64,000 nucleotides of DNA from Stylophora pistillata (taxonomy: Eukaryota). The stretch is from NCBI RefSeq assembly GCF_002571385.2, contig NW_019217852.1, positions 340,134-404,133 of the forward strand, read 5' to 3'. The position numbers and the translations under genes were made by a program. Shown piece after piece: positions 19,591 to 33,800 of the stretch (within the stretch, counting starts at the first letter, position 1; each line of letters opens with the position of its first letter). Below the pieces are notes generated by a model. It was not told the origin of the DNA. It worked only from the letters and a program-made list of their open reading frames with translations, and did not search any database.

Positions 19591-21535
19591 TTAAGATGAC
19601 ACAGGGAAGGTCATTTCTATCTTGTTCCCCAGTCCACAAATTATTGTCTGACCCCTTTTCACTGGGGAACCTCCCTCTGGAGTTCCTGTTAAAATCAAAT
19701 CCCCTTCTTCTAATGTCATGTAACGGCTGACAAAACTGATTAAATGAGGAATCTTATAAATCATATCCTGTGTATTTCCATCCTGCTTTGTTTCACCGTC
19801 AACTTTCAACCACAGATGTACATCGTTTGGGTCTGTAATCGCTGATTTGGGTATAAATTCACTGACTGGTGTTGCTGTGTCAAAGCCTTTGGCAAGTGCC
19901 CATGGGTAGGTAACTTTAATGGCTTCATTCTGAAAATAGAAGGAAACATGACTTATCAGAATCCTATTTAGGATAATTACTTAACCGTTTAGCTCTCAAG
20001 ATCAGATGGTTAAATCTCCCCTCTACCTTCTATACATTTCCTTACAAATAAGTTTCGAGAGTTTGGTGTTAGATCAAGTTAAAAACTTCTACCTGATAAG
20101 TTTGAGTATTCTCATTACCTGTTTGCTGGAAAATGCATAAATACTATGATGAGAAGTTAGGGGCTAATTTAAAATGCAAAATGAGTAAAAGAGCTCAACT
20201 CTTACTTTATTTTTAGTATTCACTACAATAGAACACTTTGCAATACCTTGATAAAAATAAAAGTATATTCTAGATGATAGGAAAGATATACAGTCAATAT
20301 CTCGAGGTACTCATGAGCCTTGACAAAATTCACAATGTTTTAACAGTTATTGAGGTAGCATGATGTAAAAGGCTGAAAAAAAATCAGGGAAATAGTCACT
20401 GAGGTGTTAATAACCTATGAGCAGGCCTTCTTTTTCAAGAAGGGGGGGGGGTAATAAAAGCTTGAGGCTCTCTTCTCACGAGGACCAACAACTTTTACAT
20501 TGATCACTAACTTCCAACTAACTCCTAAAAATATGCATAATTGCACATTTGGTAAGTGATCACTGCTTTTTGAGCCAAAAGGCTAAAAAAGACTTACTTT
20601 TTCAGTTATAAGATCAAAATCAGTCATGTCTAGAGCCAGAGCATATCCTCCAACATGCTCCATAGCTTGAGACTCTGTAATAGTTTTGCCAGTTTTGCCA
20701 ATCACAACTCCAAGCTCTACTTCATGATAAATCTGATCACGACCCACTGGAATCTGTTGAAAGTGTTAAAAAATCATGATTTTGCGTGTGCTTGAGGATC
20801 ACAAGGTTTTATAAAACACTTCTTTGAACAACTAGTTAGTGTTAGCATCCTGTAGGGATTATGAAGGTTTGTGGGTACCATTTAATTCACATGCAACACC
20901 TGTCAAGAGTCAACTTCCAACACTATTAATGACATGGCCGACTCCATAAATGTTTATGACGTAAATCCCCTCTTCTGATTGGTTACTAGGGGTGCAAAAT
21001 ATTCAAAACAGGCCCCATTTTAACCTGTCTGATTTGCGATCATATATGTTGGCTACTTTAAACACAAATGTCTTACGCTTTGGCGTGAAACGTAATCACC
21101 ACGCTTTTCACATGAACAAGTGACCATTGAACCTCAACTCCTCCACAAAGGAGGTGCCACATAACCGTGTAGGGAATCCCCAAGCCAGGACTAAACTCTA
21201 ATTCTAAACAAAACACATTATCGCCAGTCGATATCTTTTTCAAGTCTCGATCCCACTGATACCTTTTACGCTATCTCGAGAACTTACCTTAATTTTTTCC
21301 CCCGGACTCAAATATGTTGACGTTGGTTTTAAAAAAATCAAGGGATCTTGAGCAGGAGGGGGCTGTTGTGGCGATCCGTTGGGCCTGAATTAACGAAAGG
21401 AGTCTACAAATAAGACACTGAAAAAGGTTTAAAAAAATAAATAAAAAAACAGACTAACCTGTAGTTTTTACCCACGCCGATAATTTTGCGTCCAAATTCC
21501 ACAAACCTTCTGAGATCTCGTCCTTGGGAAGCCAT
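19591..21535 (-). CDS. FAHD1: FAHD1-like fumarylacetoacetate-hydrolase-family protein, divergent copy (222 aa, four exons)
   Basis: Exons 21535-21459, 21384-21288, 20753-20598, 19929-19591; all GT-AG and phase-consistent. MASQGRDLRRFVEFGRKIIGVGKNY...PLIFLKPTSTY...YHEVELGVVIG...ALDMT...PWALAKGFD...GDLILTGTP. Confidence 0.9.
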
Positions 21536-23626: not shown

Positions 23627-23975
23627 AGCGGGAAGCAGCGGATAACTGCAGTCACAAATAAACTACGGCACCATAAATGATGCATACTCCTGCGATGAAA
23701 CATTTTTAAAATCAGTGTTTATGCTTATCAGTAAAGCAGCGGATAACTGCAGTCACAAATAAACTACGGCACCATAAATAAACTACGGCACCATAAACTA
23801 ATATGGCCATAAACAGCCATATTAGTTTAAAATGACTGCCAACTCATATTTGCTTGGCTCAAGCTAGCAGTTATGCTTATCAGGGAAGCAGCGGATAACT
23901 GCAGTCACAAATAAAAGACGGCACCATAAATGATGCATACTCCTGCGATGAAACATTTTTAAAATCAGTGTTTAC
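23627..23975. repeat. Complex local tandem duplication with templated inserts
   Basis: Three copies of aagcagcggataactgcagtcacaaataaa; 23806-23883 is an identical 78-bp copy of 26217-26294. Confidence 0.85.
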
Positions 23976-24497
23976 TTTTACTTACTCTTCTCGACCACAT
24001 GCATCAGGAGACCTTCTTTTTAATCTCAGTCCTGGTCAATTGGCTACAAGCCAAGTTCTTTGCATTGAATTATGAATTATGATCGAGTTAAATCTTATGA
24101 CGTACGGAAGAGACACTTCTGCACTCTGTCATGAAAAAATGAACTGTCAGAACTGAACTGTGCTCAGTAATGCTGTGCAATTTTTTCTTGGAGTTCATCA
24201 TTTATTCTTTAGAAACTAGATTTCTACGGTTTATAAAACCTCATGAAATTTAACAGTATTCCAACATTTTCTAAGTAAGAATGAAATGGATAAATAACCG
24301 AAAGAAAAAAGAGAGATGGAGAGGAAGGGACGATTCGAATAATACGTCAATTGTATCTAGACGCTAGATGAACCAATGATAACGTAGATTAGTTAACCTC
24401 AATCGGATTCATTTCTTATCCAATGATTGCCATTGTTATAAATTACGTCAACATTTTCCCGCGCTTTCAACGCGTGAGACAATGTGAAGCGTTAACG

Positions 24498-24689
24498 ATG
24501 GCCGAAACTTTGATAGAGGAAGGCGAACGTCCAACTACAGAAAGACCAGAGCGACAAGTGATCGTTCGTCAGGTCACCCCTGATTTTCCAATACATTTAA
24601 AACTCCTATTGGCATCAACAATTGTCCTAGTTGTGCTCGTCTTAGGGACGATAGTTTATTTTATATACGCTAAATATGCAAACGAATGA
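24498..24689 (+). CDS. 63-aa single-pass (tail-anchored-like) microprotein ORF
   Basis: MAETLIEEGERPTTERPERQVIVRQVTPDFPIHLKLLLASTIVLVVLVLGTIVYFIYAKYANE*; hydrophilic N-terminus, ~24-residue hydrophobic stretch, short C-tail; ATG context ACGATGG. Confidence 0.6.
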   Translation: MAETLIEEGERPTTERPERQVIVRQVTPDFPIHLKLLLASTIVLVVLVLGTIVYFIYAKYANE

Positions 24690-27086
24690 CAGCAGCGAGA
24701 ACTACGGGCCACATACAGGTGTCTGCTCACAGGTAGGCTGATAAATATGCTTGTTTTATTCTACATGCCGCTCGATTTTAATTCAGACTCAGCTCAAAAA
24801 GGAGACGACTTCAGACTTTTAGTAGAAAACTTCACAATTTTAAGCGTTAACATATAACTTGAACTGTTGAAAATGATTATTTACACTTCGGTTTTTGTTA
24901 CCAATGCCGATATGCTTAGATGATATTTTTCCGAGATTTCAAATTAAACACACACTCATGTAATGTATCCGTACAACTGCAATTTTACATTTCCATCCAG
25001 AAAAAAATTAGGGAAATAGTTTCAACTTTGAAAATGAATTTGCATTCGGGAATAAATAATATTTCATTTTCTGGGAGCTTACATTGACGTGTATTTCAAA
25101 ATGAAAAGCGATAATTTTGGCAAGTTTTGAAAACCTTCTCATTAAATATTCACATGAAAAGCAGGTTCTTTCCGAATATTTATTTCGTGTTTGTATATTT
25201 TATTTTTCCTTATGAAAACAGAAGTTTGAAGCTCAGCCTTCACGTTCGCTACACAAAATTAACCTTTATTTATTTTTTAATTTCCTTTCTGTCAGTTTTC
25301 TAGTGAAGAAGCAAGAAACGACTTAGACTTTACCGGAAAACAGATGTTTTGCAATGATGAAGAATTTTGGTAATATCATAGAAAATAACCATAAATGTCC
25401 TTGACTCTAATTAACTCTTCTGAAGGGAAAAAAGCTCATTTGGAATGTCATTAAATAAGACAGACGGATTTGACGCGGAGAAAACATATTTTGTCGAATT
25501 TTTCGGTAACCATGTTAACATTTATGCTAATTTTATTCTAACAAAGATGAGTTCTCGCGTTTTATTTTGACTCAGTATGGTTTCCGCTTCAACCCAGAAT
25601 TTGGCAATCAATTAGTTTCACGTGAAAAAAAAAAAGAAAGAAAAAAGAAGAAAAAAGATAAAACGTAGGAAGAGAAAGTGTTTTCTTTTTTTTTCAACAT
25701 CGACAATTCGTCACCTCTGGCCAGCTGTCATATATTCCGTTCAGTATATCTAGTTTATCAACTCCAGGATATAATGAGCTGCTTCGGAATTTAGTAAAAT
25801 GTACTTTGAAAACCAACGAGACTAAACAATGTAACAGCAGTATTAATTAACCATGACGAGAAAAGGATATTACAGCTTATGATACACACATTTCTATTAT
25901 CTTAATTGATAGTACCACGGAAAAAGCCCACAAGCATGCGAATGGCTCGCCACAAACCAAGACGCAATGGAATGTAAGCAGATTATGTTCCGTTTTCATG
26001 ATTCAAACCATATTAGTTTACATACATACTTGAATGCTGAATGTTCAAACATTTTAAAGGCTCTTTTAAAAAATGCTTTTATGTCCGAAAGTTGAACTAT
26101 GTTTGAAAAAGAAGAGTCTTTTTAAAGAACAATACATTTCCATTTCTTTGAATTTGTTCTTAGAACACCACTTTCGACAATGACGATCCAGATCACACAA
26201 GTGAAAGCAACAGTAAGCCATAAACAGCCATATTAGTTTAAAATGACTGCCAACTCATATTTGCTTGGCTCAAGCTAGCAGTTATGCTTATCAGTAAATA
26301 TAAAAATGTGTCAGAGTGGAAAGGTTAAACCCACTCATGACAATTCAAGTGTTCTGAGAAAAGTGAACCCTCCCCTTGATAACAAACAGTTATGCAAAAG
26401 AAATTAAAAGCCATTGTGGAGAGAGTATGGTTTGAGCTAGACTCCACTAAAAACCCACGGAGATAATGTTGTTAATCTTTCAATCAGCCTTTGTTTCATC
26501 TGGTGGGTTTCATTTTCAATGTGCTTTCTAAACTACCAGCCTCTGATTTTGCGATGAAAATGCTGCCAAGGTTGAACTGGTGCGTCAATTTACTTGGCAA
26601 TGTATTCTTAGAGAGAATAATATACGAGTCTTCATTTATGCAAAAGGACACTAAAGATTTTTCTTTGTGGTCAAAGGTTTCATGTCACCTTTCTTAACCA
26701 GTTAATTGTATCTCTTCAACCTACTACTCTACAAATCATATTAAGAAAATAAACATTTCCTTCACCAGCAGTATGTCCTGATACCTATGAAAACATGATA
26801 TCAAGGATGGGTGAGATTGAGAAGGCTTTGGCAACTGTTAAAGAAACAATATCCACAGCAAGTGGTTAGTATGAAACAGACAAAACTAAGGATGAATGAA
26901 TACAGAAAAGCATAGAAACTAATTTAATGATATTTCTCTTTTTCCCCAACAGTGCGTTGCCATCTGCTTAATGTTGATGTTGTTACAATGTTCAGTCCAG
27001 AAATGCTAGACACCCTGAACAAAACAAAGGAACAGTGTGACAACTGTATAAAAGCAATGGAGACTTTGTCTGCTGAGGACTACTGA
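24676..27086 (+). CDS. Six-exon 156-aa protein with SYCE3-like C-terminal helical domain
   Basis: Exons 24676-24732, 25296-25369, 25913-25973, 26164-26212, 26769-26864, 26953-27086; all GT-AG with matching phases 0,2,0,1,1 and no internal stop. C-terminus CPDTYENMISRMGEIEKALATVKETISTASVRCHLLNVDVVTMFSPEMLDTLNKTKEQCDNCIKAMETLSAEDY*. Confidence 0.75.
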
Positions 27087-27877
27087 CAAAAAAATATACT
27101 AAAAGCAAAGGCTCAAGAGTACTCTTCAAAATTCTTAAAATGTATTTGGAAGAGGCAACTGAATAGCTATTCCTCGTTTAAAACACAAAACATTACTGTG
27201 CCATGTGTAAATTGTCTGTAAGAATAACATGGCATAGAGGATAAAGACAATTTGACAGCTAGACTTTGATTATGCAAATTGCAGGGTACACAATTTTCAA
27301 AAATGTTTGGATTGTTGAAAATTGAAGTGGCACAAAAGCCCTTGTTCAATACCATTTCAGTTTGAAATGGATGATTTAAATTAATTTCGATTTTTAGAGA
27401 AGAGTTATAAAATTGAGGAACTGCTCCATTTAATACTTTTATACACAACAATGAGTTGTTCATACTGTTTAATTCTGATTAACTATTCATCTTGCAACTG
27501 CTTTTTTACAATGTTGCTGTTTATACAATAAACAAGTGAAATCAAAATCCAAGAATTTTAGCATGTTTGTCTGATTGCTAATAAATAACTTGCCATATGT
27601 ACATTTTTGTCTAAACTCTATATACATTTTTCATAATACAAAAATATCCCTTAAAAAATTCATCATTTCACAATGAACTATGCCTGAAATGGAATTCTAC
27701 TAATGCAACTGATGCCTACAAAATGTCCACAATTTTTAAATTTCTACAGTATGAACCTGTAACATTAGCTTCTTTACCAATGAAGGTTATTTTCCCATAG
27801 GATTTATTCCCCTTTCAAATCCAGAGGTTTGGCACAAACTTTGACATTACTAGTGAAGATTAACCTTCTTTGTCTTG

Positions 27878-30800
27878 TTATCTATTGGGGTTTTCTGAAA
27901 CCTTGTGTTTTATCTCGCTGAGAATATGACTCTTCTTAACTTCTGTGGCATTTGGTCTTGCTTTTGGTATGGCAGACAATAACCACTGCACCAATTCCGA
28001 CTAAAAGAAAACAAGAACCAAAAAAAATGTGATTATAAAGAACCTATTCAGGTAAAGGTAAAGAATCCGATCCTACCCACGTGTTGGCCAACGCATCGCC
28101 CGACACAGGAAGACAAACTTCTTGGGATTATCATTCACGAAAATTTGTCCTAGAAACCACATATCTCTGCTGTCTGTGATAAAGTCTCTAGAGTAACAGG
28201 AGTCTTGTGCAAGTTAAGGCGATACTTTCCTTTGAATACTTTGAAAACCTTATATAGTTCTCTTTTCTTACCTTACATAAACTATGGCAGTTTAATATGG
28301 GCATCTACTTATGCTTCTTACCTAAAACCCCTTTATGTACTTCAAAAGAAAGCCGTTCGTATAATTACTTTTTCTCCTCCTCCTCTGCACATCCTCTAAA
28401 CCCCTTTTTTCTAAGCATAATATTCTTTCATTTTACTCTATTTATAAATTCCGTGTTGCCTGTTTTGTATTCTCACATTTTAATAACCTTTTACCTGCTC
28501 CTGTTTCCTCGATGCTTCATTTTAATTCTGAATATCACAATTATTTGACTCGTTCGTGTTTTAACCTGCATAAAACCTGTCATAAGTATCAATTTGTTAT
28601 CACTTGGCAAGCTCTTATTATTTGGAACGATATTCCGTTATCTGTGCGCAAAAATCTCACAGCAAGCAACTATAAAAAAAGCTTAAGACTGTATTTTTCT
28701 CTGAGTAGTTAATTAGCCTGCGCATAATCTGCATACCTTATGGGACTATATTAAGTGTATTTGTTTATATTTGTTAGTGTGGTTTATAGGAATTTATTAT
28801 TAGTCGTTTAAATATTTAAACTAGTTGCCAAGTATTGTATCTCAATTGTAAGTTTTCTGACTGACCTTTTTCTTTCTTGGTTTCATTGTATTGTAATTAT
28901 TTTAGTTAAAACTTTCTTCTACTCTTGTAAATTCTTCTCGTCTTTTGCTAACCTTAAGCCATTTAAGCCCCTGGCTTTGGCTGTTCTTGCGTATTTTTTT
29001 TCTTTCAATGTGTGAATAGCAGGAATAAAATAATACTACCGAAACACTACTGATGCATTGGTAAGATCAACCAACGCGTCGCCCAACTTGTCGGCTAATC
29101 TAACGTGTCGGCCGACAGACTACCGACACATTGGTAAGAATGACTGGATAAGAAAAGGAACTCTAAATCATTGCCATTTTGAGAACGAAACACTAGTACC
29201 TATGTCTTCTCTTAGTTCTTTTTTTCTTTTTTTTTTTTAAGGGTCGGATACCGAGGGAGTTAGCACGTTAGGCGTTGCAAGATTGACCAACACGTCACCA
29301 AGGAGCCACCAGTTTGAAAAAGTCAGTGTCCTACGTAATAGAATTGCAGTGTGATAAACATTTGAAAACCCCAACGATGCGTGTCAGTTTAGAATAGTTT
29401 TAAGGTATCCTTGTAGAAAATATATAAAATGTTCATCTATATTTAATCTTCAGTCAGTCAGGATAAGTAACTGAGTGGGAACTGGGTTCCAAGAACATGA
29501 CAAACAAGATGGTGGCCAAAAGGAAATTATTCATTTTCATATCATGAGTGAAAGTTTAGCATTGCTTAACATAAATAAGGCCCAAACTAAGTCACTGATG
29601 CACCGCCGACAGACCACCGCATCTCGTACATTAGAGGGATAGATGGTGGCCAATGTGCCAGTAGGATCGGATTCTTTACCTTTACTGATATTAAATAGAA
29701 ATAAAACAAATAAACAATTAAACAAAACTTACCTATTAAATAAATTAATGGCATCAGCCTTCCAATTACATCTCCTTATAGCTCAAAGCATACCCCCCCC
29801 AAATTCTCAAGTAAGAAATATAGACCGGTACATGTGCCAAGGGCTAACAAAGGGACATAAAATATGTTTTATTATACTGCACCTGTAGAGGCATTTTTTC
29901 TTGAAAGTAATTTGGGATGACCCTCTGTTTGACACCACACATAACCTATAATTGACAGTAACAAATACACAGTGAGTCCAAAAGAAATATTCTTAAAAGC
30001 CTATTTTCCACTGATGGTGGAAGCATTAACCAATGCAAAGGGGAAAGTACAGAAATCCTTCCAAGTGTTTCATTCTTTTGCTAAATTTCAGCCTAAACAT
30101 GTGTCAGTTTTAGTATGTTTCCAGAATCAAACCTAAATCTTTTTCGTACTTAACCACAGCTTTCACTCAAGCAATAGCCTTTGATACTGAATTCTACAGG
30201 AAAATTCATCACCTGGCAAGGAATTCCATGTTAAATTGCACAAAATTTGATTTTCCTTGAATCGCATAATTAAATATATAAAAGAAAAAAAGATAACAGC
30301 AATGACATAGTTTGTTTTTATCCTGAGTTTGAAACATGACATGCAAAGCAATATCATAAAGGTGAAGGTGTAGTCTGATCGTCACTTGACTCTGATGATG
30401 ACTTCTGCACAGGTTGTCAAAACGTCAGTCACTACCACCGCTCACCCGGACGATCAGACTACACCTTCACATGTTACCCCCGGGTTCAAGCCATTTACTG
30501 CAATATCATAAAGCCTTGTTTGCAATAGTCCATTTTTCAGTTGTGTGCTTGGTTGCCAAGCCTTTGAATAGGAGTGAGGCTAGGGTTGACCTTGCTGCCT
30601 TTCAAATGTAAATCACTTTGTTATCATACTAAGTAGATACAGGTCTCTATCACATCAAGGTCACCTTCAGCCTCACTATGAATCAAAGGCTTGGCAACTA
30701 AGTACACAACTGTAAAATGGCCTATTTGCAATTCCATACTAAATACCTAACTTCTTTAACCAATGCAAGATTTTATTCAATTATGCAATTCTGTATTAAA

Positions 30801-33800
30801 TACATACTCCAAAGCCTATTAATGCATTTTAACCAAACAATCGGAAAGAGATATTGAACTTTAGAATATAGAGTAAATGGAGAGGAAGTGGCGATGTCAA
30901 AGGCTTCAAGCTCTTTAAAAACCCGCTAACAACAACCTTTCAGTCAAGTAAAAGAAGTCATTCCCTCAGCATTGCAATAGTTGGAATTACATAAGGAGCT
31001 CACTACTTCAGACTTAGTCAACTTGTTTATGAGTAATCAAGAAAGAATTTCTCCTTAGAATATCAATGCAATATCAAGCAGAAAACTAACAAGAATAAGG
31101 AAAAGAGAGGATCAGGTGATAATCAGGGCGGGGTTATTCAAAGCTGCGTTAAGTTAACCTAGTGTTAGCATGAAATTTGATTTCAGATCTGAAAGCTTTA
31201 GGAGAAAGTTCAGTTTAATTATTTTGTGTCTACAATTTGACGATCGGATGCTCTAAAAAGAACAGGGAAAATTATCTCATAAAGGTTCTTGAATAGAGAA
31301 ATTAGGAAACCTGAATCAAAATTCAACCCTGGATTAGTGCTAATCGGCCTTTGAACAACTGGACCCAGATCAGTTGATCCAATACCAAATTCTCCAAACT
31401 AACATAAGAATTGTATGGCAGACAGTAAGGAGAATTACAGATGAGATCTTGGGAGTGAAAGGGTTAATGACCAGTCCACCCTGCCCCTCTTACCTTAATC
31501 CTTTCCATTTGAGTACTAAATGGACAAAACAGCTCAAAAAATATGAGTCCAAGGGAAAAGATGTCTACCTTGTGGGAATATGGCTTTCCCTCCATCTGAA
31601 AGTAGTTAAGAAGAATGAAATGAAGGTCGGTTTGTACTGCACACAATAATGCTTTCTGTGCAGTCTTTGGGTAACCTCTCTTAAAGTAACTGTTAAATAA
31701 AAGTACAAAACTTGTTTTCATAAGCAGTAGTTTTGTAACATGGGCATTCCTTTCAAGTACAGGAACTGATCTATCACAATGAAGAACGAGTCCTTCAATT
31801 TTTTCGTTTAATAAATAAATTACCTCTACTAATTACAATTCAACAACTGTACAAAACTTACTGCTTAAAAAGCATTTCACAGAAAAAGTGTGTAACTTAA
31901 ACTTGACAAGCTACCAGTACTTACACTCAGTACACCTATGAGCTAATTTACACATTTAGCACCACAAGCAAGCTTCGCTGATTGTGCTAAAACTGGACAA
32001 TAGTTTTGTCACCTGTTCTGGGCTCATGTACAACTGTGTTCCAACTTGGCTTGTATGATTTGTGTCATCCATTAGAGAATCTACGCATACACCAAAGCAC
32101 AATTTTAAAAATGTAGTCTGATCATCACAATGCTGACCTAATAAATAACTTTCATGTACCAACAAAATCTTACTTTTTTCAAGCAAGACATAATTTACAA
32201 TTAGTAATGGATGATGCGTGACTTGGTCATCTCTAATCATGCTCCTAATAGTCCAGTTTGGTTTGACCCCTTGACCCATAACATAATAAACATGGTATGC
32301 ATCATCTGATTGGTCAATTCAGTTTCCAAACAGATACTTTATGAGGTTATAGGGCCCGCATGTCATTAGTTATGTCATAAAAGCAGTAGAATGCATTTTT
32401 CCAGGCTCTATACTCACAGTGATGAAGCCACTCACAAAGGTTATCAATCACTCACCTTTGGCTCACCATTTTTAAGCTTTCCCCATGTTCTCCCAACATC
32501 CCACATGGCTTAATCACATTACACAGCGCAGAAAAATGTGCACTATTACTTGACTAGCACATTATTTCTCCTTACAAAGCCACCCCCCGAATCACACATT
32601 CTGGCCAGGAAAATGAAGGAAATGATCACCAACTAAAGAAGCTCTACATGGTTAAACAAATTCTCCTTGTCAGCACGTTACAGAATGTATTAATGCGATG
32701 AATAAGCATACGGAAGTTGGGGTGTGAAGGGCTAACTGTTGCCATACCTTTAATGGGTGTGTCCAGGTTGTTTTCTGATGTGTGGGCTGTCACTAATCCA
32801 AAATCACCAACTTTCACTGAACCATCCAGTGAAAAGAAAATATTGGATGGCTGTGAAATAGAATAAAGAGATTGCGGCATAATTTAAACAACATAATTAC
32901 TTTGTTAATATTTTAAATTTGCTAAAGCTCTAACTGGAGGCAATATTTTTATTTAAAGTAAACTGGCCTGGCTGAAAGCAAATATATGAAAAAAGGGATT
33001 ACAAAGCTACCAGCCAGATATTTCATAAACCTGATATAGCAAATGACTCACTGCATCTGTAAACTTGTGCAATTACAAATTAAAATGAAACATTGCCTAA
33101 AAAGCCAGTTTGGTAGGACTCTTAATTACAAGCTGACTTTACGACACTCCTACCATTTTATCTCTTTTTATATGATTTGTAGAATTTCTCTTACCTTTAA
33201 ATCTCTATGCATAAGTCCTCTTCCATGAAAGTACTCAACAGCACCTAGGATCTGTAACAAGCACTTAATAATCAAATTTTCTATAAATAAAATATTAGAG
33301 TGCCATCATCATGGAAGAATGCATTTTACAGAAAGAATGCATTTTACAGAAATAGAAAGGTCTCTTTTCTCACATAACAACCTTGTTGGCACTTTTCCAA
33401 GTTCTAATCATGAACTAGTATTTTTCAATCCAGAGATTTTACTTTACATTTAGAGTAGATACTCAATTCATTGAAAATAGGCATCATAAACCAAGTCTTC
33501 AATTTGTCTGTTTGTTGCAATCATCACTAATTTAAAAGTAAAATGATACCTCTTCAAAGACATTCAGGCAGTATTTATGGTTCCTTTCATGATTAGCTTT
33601 GAGCCAGTCTTTCAGGCTTTCTTTCTGACAAAGCTGCATCTGGATAAACAGGTACAATGGTGCTGACAGCTTATCAGTATTGCACTGCTTATCCTGACAC
33701 TTATGTTTTTCTCCTAAAATAAAAACATATTAATAACATTTTAAGTCAGATAAGCAAAAACACCAAGAACTCATTTAGTGAGTTGAGCATTTGAAACTTG

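What the first reader, a model, noticed from the sequence alone, without database searches (positions are those of the whole stretch)
24676..27086. Hidden six-exon gene encoding a SYCE3-like synaptonemal-complex protein in a cnidarian
Seen: six small phase-consistent exons, invisible to the ORF track, give 156 aa. The last ~70 residues (YENMISRMGEIEKALATVKETISTASVRCHLLNVDVVTMFS-PEMLDTLNKTKEQCDNCIKAME) align with one gap to recalled human SYCE3 (YDNMLKMLSDLNKDLEKLLEEMEKISVQATWMAYDMVVMRTNPTLAESMRRLEDAFVNCKEEME). That gives about 16 identities, including YxNM, SV, DxVxM, the loop Pro and NCxxxME, with matching hydrophobic periodicity. Established as I recall: SYCE3 was regarded as a vertebrate addition, while SYCP1, SYCP3, SYCE2 and TEX12 trace to cnidarians. 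Inference: SYCE3 may predate the cnidarian-bilaterian split, here with an ~85-aa polar N-terminal extension.
Basis: partly seen in the sequence, partly recalled or inferred. Interest (0 to 1): 0.8.

Follow-up and report, generated by a model that had tools for sequence, protein, structure and literature searches.

The report
Coral SYCE3-like meiotic gene, second cistron
A small six-exon coral gene, so far annotated only as "uncharacterized", is a real, spliced gene. Its C-terminal half is a distant but statistically supported relative of SYCE3, the one chromosome-pairing (synaptonemal complex) protein still thought to be missing from cnidarians.

Summary
RNA from four studies shows all five GT-AG introns exactly as described. 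The spliced frame from ATG 24676 to the stop at 27084-27086 gives 156 aa. That product is identical to Stylophora pistillata RefSeq LOC111325190, "uncharacterized protein", so the gene is annotated but not identified.

The SYCE3 reading is supported at profile level. The protein alone hits mouse SYCE3 (PDB 4R3Q/6H86) and Pfam PF15191 first, but weakly (E 0.05 and 0.009, below Pfam's cut-off). Profiles of its relatives hit SYCE3 as the only clear PDB match (E 1.2e-5). These relatives are corals, Nematostella, molluscs and a hemichordate. Cnidarian-only and bilaterian-only profiles each do so too. The hemichordate member reaches 25.6 bits against a cut-off of 27. The three nearest ESM Atlas clusters are SYCE3.

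The family shares a phase-1 intron and a PERK-like kinase neighbour across three phyla. A 2026 preprint states that Nematostella lacks SYCE3, yet its LOC5520931 belongs to this family.

Untested: meiotic expression, dimer formation, SYCP1 binding, and the intron site in vertebrates. The Trp41/Tyr44 assembly patch of mammalian SYCE3 is not kept.

Exon 1 also carries a conserved overlapping upstream ORF for a 63-aa membrane microprotein.

The parts
24437..24443 (+). TATA-like box about 40-45 nt upstream of the first RNA-covered base. CCAAT motifs lie at about 24375 and 24421.
   Evidence: Read directly from the sequence. RNA coverage starts at about 24483 and there are no reads or joints upstream. 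The promoter role is an inference.
24483..24732 (+). Exon 1, with an approximate 5' end. It holds both the upstream ORF and the first 19 codons of the SYCE3-like ORF.
   Evidence: Contigs start at 24483, 24490 and 24508 and are joined to exon 2. The donor GT is at 24733.
24498..24689 (+). Upstream ORF of 63 codons plus stop, encoding a single-pass membrane microprotein. Its ATG has a strong Kozak context (A at -3, G at +4). It overlaps the main ATG by 14 nt in another frame.
   Evidence: It is conserved from start to stop in Porites, a further coral and Nematostella, and the part captured in the Orbicella contig is conserved too. The overlap is kept in all four. dN/dS is 0.17-0.35. Its 20 relatives are all unnamed.
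24676..24732 (+). Start of the SYCE3-like CDS: 19 codons, ending in phase 0.
   Evidence: The N-terminal motif from this ATG is conserved in corals of several families.
25296..25369 (+). Exon 2 (74 nt), part of the polar N-terminal extension.
   Evidence: RNA joints in four runs.
25913..25973 (+). Exon 3 (61 nt), part of the polar N-terminal extension. A T>C variant sits at 25973.
   Evidence: RNA joints (tables 5 and 5c).
26164..26212 (+). Exon 4 (49 nt), the end of the disordered extension.
   Evidence: RNA joints. pLDDT is below 50 for residues 8-80.
26769..26864 (+). Exon 5, encoding most of helix 1 of the SYCE3-like domain, including Tyr87, which aligns to SYCE3 Tyr11. A tandem CAG|CAG acceptor probably explains the 155-aa isoform X2.
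26953..27086 (+). Coding part of exon 6. It starts with the last two bases of the split Val113 codon and encodes the end of helix 1 (the V-R-C-H-L-L-N-V-D motif), the Ser-Pro loop, helix 2 with C-x-x-C, and the stop at 27084-27086.
   Evidence: This exon alone finds 34 representatives with E up to 0.001.
27087..27458 (+). 3' UTR with an approximate end. It abuts the 3' end of the convergent kinase gene on the - strand.
   Evidence: In the stranded run, depth switches strand at about 27458-27475 (tables 2 and 6).

Best explanation
The locus is a real, expressed six-exon gene, identical to Stylophora pistillata LOC111325190. Its product has a disordered polar N-terminal half of about 80 aa and a C-terminal helix-loop-helix of about 70 aa. 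That C-terminal domain is a divergent homolog, most likely the cnidarian ortholog, of vertebrate SYCE3. By inference it acts as SYCE3 does in mouse. There, a small helical hairpin pairs into a four-helix dimer, self-assembles, binds the SYCP1 transverse filament and recruits SYCE1-SIX6OS1 and SYCE2-TEX12 to build the central element of the synaptonemal complex. Shown here: the gene structure, transcription, family membership across Cnidaria, Mollusca and Hemichordata, and profile-level similarity to SYCE3. Inferred: dimerisation, SYCP1 binding and a meiotic role. My odds are about 0.85 for homology to SYCE3 and about 0.55 for a synaptonemal-complex central-element function.
For: Gene: joints in 4 RNA runs, an open 156-aa frame, and identity to RefSeq P0133. 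Homology, single protein: PDB phmmer puts mouse SYCE3 first at E 0.049, and Pfam puts PF15191 first at E 0.0094. Homology, profiles: A1 hits SYCE3 at E 1.2e-5 with the next hit at 0.35, and A2 at 5.2e-5. The cnidarian-only profile gives 0.0046 and the bilaterian-only profile 0.0015, each with SYCE3 first. In the reverse direction, PF15191 hits 12 of 18 members. The deuterostome member, Ptychodera P0013, scores best at 25.6 bits and E 1.1e-5. The three top ESM Atlas clusters are all PF15191, with scores 0.91, 0.89 and 0.87. All alignments are colinear over the whole domain with one gap at the loop. Tyr87, Ile91 and Pro128 align with the SYCE3 assembly determinants Tyr11, Leu15 and Pro53 (PMC6556580). 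Predicted helices 87-125 and 128-154 correspond to SYCE3 10-48 and 55-85. Orthology within the invertebrate family rests on two features. A phase-1 intron in the Val/Ile codon after 'AS' is shared by the coral, Nematostella, Ptychodera and Solemya. A convergent PERK-like kinase neighbour is seen in Porites, Nematostella, Ptychodera and Solemya, and a weak kinase-like exon lies at the same place in the window. An FAA-hydrolase neighbour is seen in the window, Porites and Nematostella. The mouse Syce3 CDS also lies in two exons (PMC3102746).
Against: The protein itself scores 16.3 bits against Pfam's cut-off of 27, and no member reaches the cut-off. Nematostella P0058 does not hit PF15191 at all. 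Exon-by-exon Pfam and PDB searches and the six-frame genome scan with PF15191 did not pick up this locus. Mammalian Trp41/Tyr44, needed for SYCE3 self-assembly and fertility, align to Leu117/Val120. The family's own invariant residues, His116 and Cys141-x-x-Cys144, are absent from mouse SYCE3 except the last Cys. Fold searches were uninformative and the homodimer job gave no verdict. There is no tissue information. The transcript is present in many colony RNA runs at a level like the neighbouring kinase gene, which does not point to meiosis-restricted expression. From memory only, human SYCE3 is not next to EIF2AK3, so synteny does not reach vertebrates.
Confidence: 0.7

Rival explanations
1. 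The gene is homologous to SYCE3 but does not act in the synaptonemal complex. The family would be an older or parallel branch of small helical-hairpin proteins with another role, possibly metal-dependent through its conserved His and Cys-x-x-Cys. The vertebrate central-element function would then have arisen later.
For: The family-invariant His116, Cys141 and Cys144 are not kept in mouse SYCE3, and the SYCE3 Trp41/Tyr44 patch is not kept here (PMC6556580). The transcript is found in many colony RNA runs at moderate depth. The long disordered N-terminal extension is absent from the 88-aa vertebrate protein.
Against: Cnidarians have the other central-element partners: SYCP1, SYCE1, SYCE2, TEX12 and SIX6OS1 (preprint 10.64898/2026.01.18.699972). 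SYCE3 is the only one missing there, and this is the only SYCE3-like gene found in the coral genome. Transcript abundance says little, because the same mRNA also carries the microprotein ORF.
Confidence: 0.18
2. The resemblance to SYCE3 is convergent: two amphipathic helices with a proline loop, with weak HMM scores arising from coiled-coil-like composition.
For: All scores are below Pfam's curated threshold. Identity is about 25%. Structure searches gave only generic long-helix matches.
Against: Among 177,635 PDB sequences, including thousands of coiled coils, SYCE3 alone reaches 26-29 bits and the next hits score 13-14.5. The result repeats with two disjoint sub-profiles. It also holds in the reverse direction with Pfam and with an alignment-free language-model search. 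Scores rise towards the deuterostome member, as descent predicts.
Confidence: 0.1
3. The main product of this mRNA is the upstream 63-aa membrane microprotein, and the 156-aa ORF is translated little or not at all.
For: The upstream ATG comes first and has the stronger Kozak context, and that ORF is under purifying selection.
Against: The 156-aa ORF is conserved across three phyla, spans five introns with its stop in the last exon, and its N-terminal residues are conserved from the ATG onward. In four corals there is no ATG between the upstream start and the start of the main frame, and the leader is only about 15-30 nt. Both favour leaky scanning to the second ORF.
Confidence: 0.05

Closest known systems
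Vertebrate SYCE3 (Pfam PF15191 Synaptonemal_3; mouse structure 4R3Q, human 6H86)
   Same: Both have a helix-loop-helix of about 70-75 aa with colinear similarity over the whole domain and one gap at the loop. The loop proline (Pro53/Pro128), Tyr11/Tyr87, hydrophobic Leu15/Ile91, the Ser-Val at the intron site, Asp45/Asp121 and the Asn-Cys in helix 2 are kept. In the coral the domain is split by one intron. The whole mouse coding sequence lies in two exons.
   Different: The coral protein has an extra disordered N-terminal half of about 80 aa. Trp41/Tyr44 are replaced by Leu/Val. It has a conserved His plus Cys-x-x-Cys, placed where they could face each other across the hairpin, which mammals lack. 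Helix 2 ends about 9 residues earlier. It scores below Pfam's cut-off. In hexacorals it is encoded downstream of an overlapping microprotein ORF.
Invertebrate 'uncharacterized' proteins of the same family: Nematostella LOC5520931 (A7RIB9), Orbicella LOC110054711, Pocillopora LOC113674082, Porites, Montipora, Ptychodera XP_070540928, oyster K1QER4, Aplysia LOC101846124, Solemya, Littorina, Batillaria
   Same: They share the domain and the phase-1 intron. The PERK-like kinase neighbour is shared by the loci that were fetched. Cnidarian members share the six-exon layout and, in hexacorals, the upstream ORF.
   Different: Bilaterian members have shorter or different N-termini, and some have long C-terminal tails. 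No upstream microprotein ORF was found near the Ptychodera or Solemya genes.
Other small central-element proteins (TEX12, SYCE2)
   Same: They are small helical meiotic proteins already traced to cnidarians.
   Different: There was no sequence signal to them. Among synaptonemal-complex families, Pfam and PDB searches gave only SYCE3.

Membership tests
SYCE3 (PF15191 Synaptonemal_3) | Score at or above Pfam's gathering threshold (27 bits) | tested here: not met
   P0133, the window's own protein, scores 16.3 bits at E 0.0094 and PF15191 is its top family. The best relative, P0013, scores 25.6 bits. This is an operational criterion, not a biological one.
SYCE3 (PF15191 Synaptonemal_3) | Significant sequence similarity over the whole domain to a solved SYCE3 | tested here: met
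   Family profiles against PDB give 4R3Q/6H86 at E 1.2e-5 and 5.2e-5, covering chain residues 7-80, with the next hits at 0.35 or worse. Two disjoint sub-profiles give 0.0046 and 0.0015.
SYCE3 (PF15191 Synaptonemal_3) | Two alpha-helices (10-48 and 55-85) joined by a short loop with Pro53 | tested here: met
   AlphaFold2 predicts helices 87-125 and 128-154 with a break at Ser127-Pro128, with pLDDT about 90 in the helix cores. Pro128 is invariant in the family and aligns to Pro53. These are predictions only.
SYCE3 (PF15191 Synaptonemal_3) | Compact dimeric antiparallel four-helix bundle | tested here: inconclusive
   The homodimer job gave no verdict, with a score of 0.02. The monomer models matched only generic long helices in the fold searches.
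SYCE3 (PF15191 Synaptonemal_3) | [quoted passage not shown] | tested here: met
   Tyr87 is invariant in cnidarians and Ile91 is hydrophobic. They align to Tyr11 and Leu15 (PMC6556580).
SYCE3 (PF15191 Synaptonemal_3) | Surface aromatic patch Trp41/Tyr44 required for higher-order assembly | tested here: not met
   The aligned residues are Leu117 and Val120, hydrophobic but not aromatic (PMC6556580, PMC7614228).
SYCE3 (PF15191 Synaptonemal_3) | Meiosis-specific expression and localisation to the central element; binding to SYCP1, SYCE1-SIX6OS1 and SYCE2-TEX12 | not testable with these tools
   The RNA runs carry no tissue labels. No paper mentions any of the gene ids.
SYCE3 (PF15191 Synaptonemal_3) | Shared intron position within the domain | not tested
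   The phase-1 intron in the Val codon is conserved in the coral, Nematostella, Ptychodera and Solemya. The mouse CDS is in two exons (PMC3102746), but the exact vertebrate site could not be read, because no vertebrate SYCE3 record could be reached with the tools.

The most novel reading that the evidence does not exclude
SYCE3 is not a vertebrate invention. The full mammalian-type central element (SYCE1, SYCE2, SYCE3, TEX12, SIX6OS1) would then already have existed in the cnidarian-bilaterian ancestor. In hexacorals, SYCE3 would be the second cistron of an anciently conserved overlapping dicistronic mRNA whose first cistron is a 63-aa membrane microprotein. SYCE3 output would then be set at translation, by leaky scanning from a very short leader or by a germline start site inside the upstream ORF. 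The ancestral protein may have been stapled by a His/Cys metal site that vertebrates lost.
Probability: 0.35. Interest if true: 0.75.

Novelty: new member of a known kind. Interest (0 to 1): 0.62.

Why it matters
The literature traces SYCP1-3, SYCE2 and TEX12 to early metazoans, and since 2026 also SYCE1 and SIX6OS1. SYCE3 has been left as a vertebrate addition, and the 2026 Nematostella study states it is the one central-element protein cnidarians lack. In mouse, SYCE3 is the adapter that remodels the SYCP1 lattice and recruits the other central-element complexes. Its supposed absence therefore implied a different assembly logic in cnidarians.

A named candidate now exists in Nematostella (LOC5520931), corals, molluscs and a hemichordate. 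This makes the question directly testable by antibody staining, yeast two-hybrid with SYCP1 and SYCE1, and CRISPR knockout in a tractable cnidarian. It also removes the main argument for stepwise, late completion of the central element.

The conserved overlapping microprotein ORF is a second, independent curiosity.

Tried and rejected
- **Exon-by-exon searches.** Pfam and PDB searches of exons 5 and 6 gave no SYCE3 signal because the pieces are too short. The ESM Atlas search with exon 6 alone gave no usable hit.
- **Six-frame scan of the genome with PF15191.** It found only a chance-level 24-aa match on another contig, C19 (E 4.1). That match sits in a 29-aa ORF with no follow-on exon, so I dismissed it.
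- **Paralog search.** Exon 6 found no credible second copy in the genome. The only other match has E 0.44.
- **Fold searches.** Foldseek and VIA-align searches with two AlphaFold2 models gave only generic long-helix or coiled-coil matches (Z about 6) or nothing. SYCE3 was not singled out.
- **Homodimer prediction.** The job on residues 80-156 of P0051 (a 96%-identical relative of the window's protein) gave no verdict, with a score of 0.02 against a mark of 0.32. This is neither support nor evidence against.
- **Second iterative word search.** The search with alignment A3 reached only Aplysia and fragments, and no vertebrate SYCE3. As a result I could build no vertebrate alignment for hhalign and could read no vertebrate intron.
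- **Paper searches.** Searches for the gene and protein ids found nothing. One broad paper search was uninformative.
- **Genome scans for partners.** Exon-wise scans gave an SCP-1 exon over its cut-off, but nothing usable for TEX12 or SYCE1. The method is insensitive for short multi-exon genes.
- **Joined-model search.** Exons were searched by reference. The splice product was built only inside scripts, to check the frame and to compare it with database proteins. Full-length work used the identical database protein P0133 and its relatives.
Full report
**Observation**

The region was read and public RNA was laid on 23800-28200. Four runs from four studies were used: three sets of contigs and one stranded raw-read run. 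All four show the same five joints, and all are GT..AG. After the stated cut shifts they are 24732/25296, 25369/25913, 25973/26164, 26212/26769 and 26864/26953. In the stranded run every joint read has its first mate on the - strand, so the RNA is + strand. RNA cover begins at about 24483 and ends at about 27458. There a convergent - strand transcript takes over.

A script confirmed GT and AG at every border. It also confirmed that the frame from ATG 24676 stays open for 156 codons to TGA 27084-27086.

The product is identical to database protein P0133, which is Stylophora pistillata XP_022784678.1, LOC111325190 isoform X1, "uncharacterized protein". The window is thus very probably S. pistillata. 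The gene is annotated but unnamed, so it is not truly hidden.

**How the spliced model was handled**

The splice product was built only inside scripts, for the frame check and for the identity check against database proteins. All full-length analyses used P0133 and its relatives, which the tools returned.

**Relatives**

Exon by exon, Pfam and PDB gave nothing for SYCE3 because the pieces are too short.

Exon 6 alone, searched against 1.84 billion representatives, found 34 proteins with E up to 0.001. A profile word search found more. Named members, all "uncharacterized" or "hypothetical", are:
- corals: Stylophora, Pocillopora, Porites, Montipora, Orbicella, Oculina and Desmophyllum;
- the sea anemone Nematostella (LOC5520931 / A7RIB9);
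- molluscs: oyster K1QER4, Solemya, Aplysia, Littorina and Batillaria;
- the hemichordate Ptychodera flava.

Many short hits are ORFs that read out of the intron straight into the last exon. Their homologous part begins exactly at the Val of the V-R-C-H motif.

Mapping proteins on genomic loci shows the same phase-1 intron in that Val/Ile codon in Nematostella, Ptychodera and Solemya, as in the coral. The downstream convergent neighbour is a kinase of about 1000 aa with a split kinase domain. In Solemya it also has a PQQ-like propeller, so it is PERK-like. This neighbour is seen in Porites, Nematostella, Ptychodera and Solemya. In the window only a weak kinase-like exon (Pkinase, 17.6 bits, below its cut-off) lies at the corresponding place. 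An FAA-hydrolase gene lies upstream in the window, Porites and Nematostella. These invertebrate genes are therefore orthologs of one another.

**Is it SYCE3?**

Single protein. A phmmer search of P0133 against all PDB sequences puts mouse SYCE3 (4R3Q/6H86) first at E 0.049. Pfam puts PF15191 first at E 0.0094 and 16.3 bits, below the 27-bit cut-off.

Profiles. A 7-member profile hits SYCE3 at E 1.2e-5 (28.8 bits) with the next hit at 0.35. An 18-member profile gives 5.2e-5. A cnidarian-only profile gives 0.0046 and a bilaterian-invertebrate-only profile 0.0015. SYCE3 is first in each.

Reverse direction. PF15191 is hit by 12 of 18 members, and the next family by 6. The deuterostome member P0013 scores best, at 25.6 bits and E 1.1e-5. 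It also carries PF15191 in the precomputed tables.

Alignment-free check. An ESM Atlas search with residues 80-156 of the close relative P0051 returns three PF15191 clusters as its top three hits, with scores 0.91, 0.89 and 0.87.

Structure prediction. AlphaFold2 gives a disordered N-terminal stretch of about 80 residues and two helices, 87-125 and 128-154, broken at Ser-Pro. This matches the SYCE3 helices 10-48 and 55-85 described in PMC6556580.

Assembly determinants. Of those defined in that paper, Tyr11, Leu15 and Pro53 align to Tyr87, Ile91 and the invariant Pro128. Trp41/Tyr44 align to Leu117/Val120.

I conclude that homology is well supported. Family membership in the strict Pfam sense is not met. 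The mammalian aromatic assembly patch is not conserved.

**What could not be shown**

- Fold searches returned only generic long helices, and the homodimer job gave no verdict.
- No tissue information is available. The transcript occurs in many colony RNA runs at a depth similar to the neighbouring kinase gene, which does not suggest strict meiotic restriction. This mRNA also carries a second ORF, so its abundance says little about the SYCE3-like protein.
- The vertebrate intron position could not be read. The mouse coding sequence is only known to lie in two exons (PMC3102746). No vertebrate SYCE3 record could be reached, because the word-based searches do not bridge to vertebrates.

**Differences from vertebrate SYCE3**

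- The coral protein has a polar, disordered extension of about 80 aa, conserved among corals from the initiator Met.
- His116 and Cys141-x-x-Cys144 are invariant in the family, and Cys115 nearly so. They lie about equally far on either side of the loop, so they should face each other across the hairpin. This suggests a metal site or disulfide staple, which is an inference. Mouse keeps only the last Cys.
- Helix 2 is about 9 residues shorter.

**The upstream ORF**

Exon 1 holds an ATG at 24498 in a strong Kozak context. It opens a 63-codon ORF that ends at 24689, 14 nt past the main ATG and in another frame. It encodes a polar N-terminus, one transmembrane helix and a short tail.

Gene callers found the same 63-aa ORF with the same 14-nt overlap on transcripts of another coral. 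tblastn and direct reading show it conserved from start to stop in Porites and Nematostella. The Orbicella contig holds only its last 31 residues, which are 94% identical, with the same overlap. dN/dS among corals is 0.17-0.35. All 20 database relatives are unnamed.

In four corals there is no ATG between the upstream start and the start of the main frame, and the leader is only about 15-30 nt. This fits leaky scanning, which is an inference.

The conservation tests here support it.

**Literature**

Fraune et al., as cited in PMC4132317, hold SYCE3 to be vertebrate-specific. The 2026 Nematostella preprint (10.64898/2026.01.18.699972) reports SYCE1, SIX6OS1 and TEX12 in Nematostella and states that only HORMAD2 and SYCE3 are lacking. 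Nematostella P0058 does not hit PF15191 on its own, which explains the miss. SYCE3's role as the SYCP1-remodelling adapter is from PMC7614228.

**Verdict**

This is a real gene and a well-supported remote SYCE3 homolog. It is probably the missing cnidarian and invertebrate SYCE3, and it is testable in Nematostella. Its function in the synaptonemal complex remains an inference.

Noticed in passing
window 24498-24689 (+): A conserved upstream ORF for a 63-aa single-pass membrane microprotein overlaps the SYCE3-like start by 14 nt. Start, stop and overlap are kept in Porites and Nematostella, and stop and overlap in the partial Orbicella and other-coral contigs. dN/dS is 0.17-0.35. It is unnamed in every database, and no ATG lies between the two starts in corals. 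This looks like a conserved dicistronic mRNA.
   Followed up: yes
window about 27458-32300 (-): A convergent neighbour gene has its 3' end abutting the SYCE3-like 3' UTR and splices on beyond 28002. Kinase-like exons lie at 31467-31721 and 31959-32279. In Solemya the syntenic gene is PERK-like (propeller plus split kinase). The pairing is also seen in Porites, Nematostella, Ptychodera and Solemya, so it spans three phyla.
   Followed up: partly
window 19594-19809 (-): An exon of an FAA-hydrolase (FAHD-like) gene scores Pfam E 1.1e-17. The same upstream neighbour is seen in Porites and Nematostella.
   Followed up: partly
window 26766-26771 (+): A tandem CAG|CAG acceptor at exon 5 probably gives the 155-aa RefSeq isoform X2. 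Only the 26769 acceptor was seen in the reads laid.
   Followed up: no
window 26825, 27042, 24560, 24712: Common variants appear in the RNA runs: G>A (Ala100Thr), A>G (Asn143Asp), and two in exon 1. The same substitutions occur in database alleles P0051 and P0140. They look like population polymorphism, not editing.
   Followed up: partly
window 28205-28712 (+): ORFs here carry motifs typical of the C-terminal end of a reverse transcriptase from a non-LTR retroelement, lying in or near an intron of the kinase gene. I did not examine them.
   Followed up: no
G000:C34:511043-511222 (+): An exon-level hit to Pfam SCP-1 (SYCP1) scores 23.6 bits, over its cut-off.
   Followed up: partly
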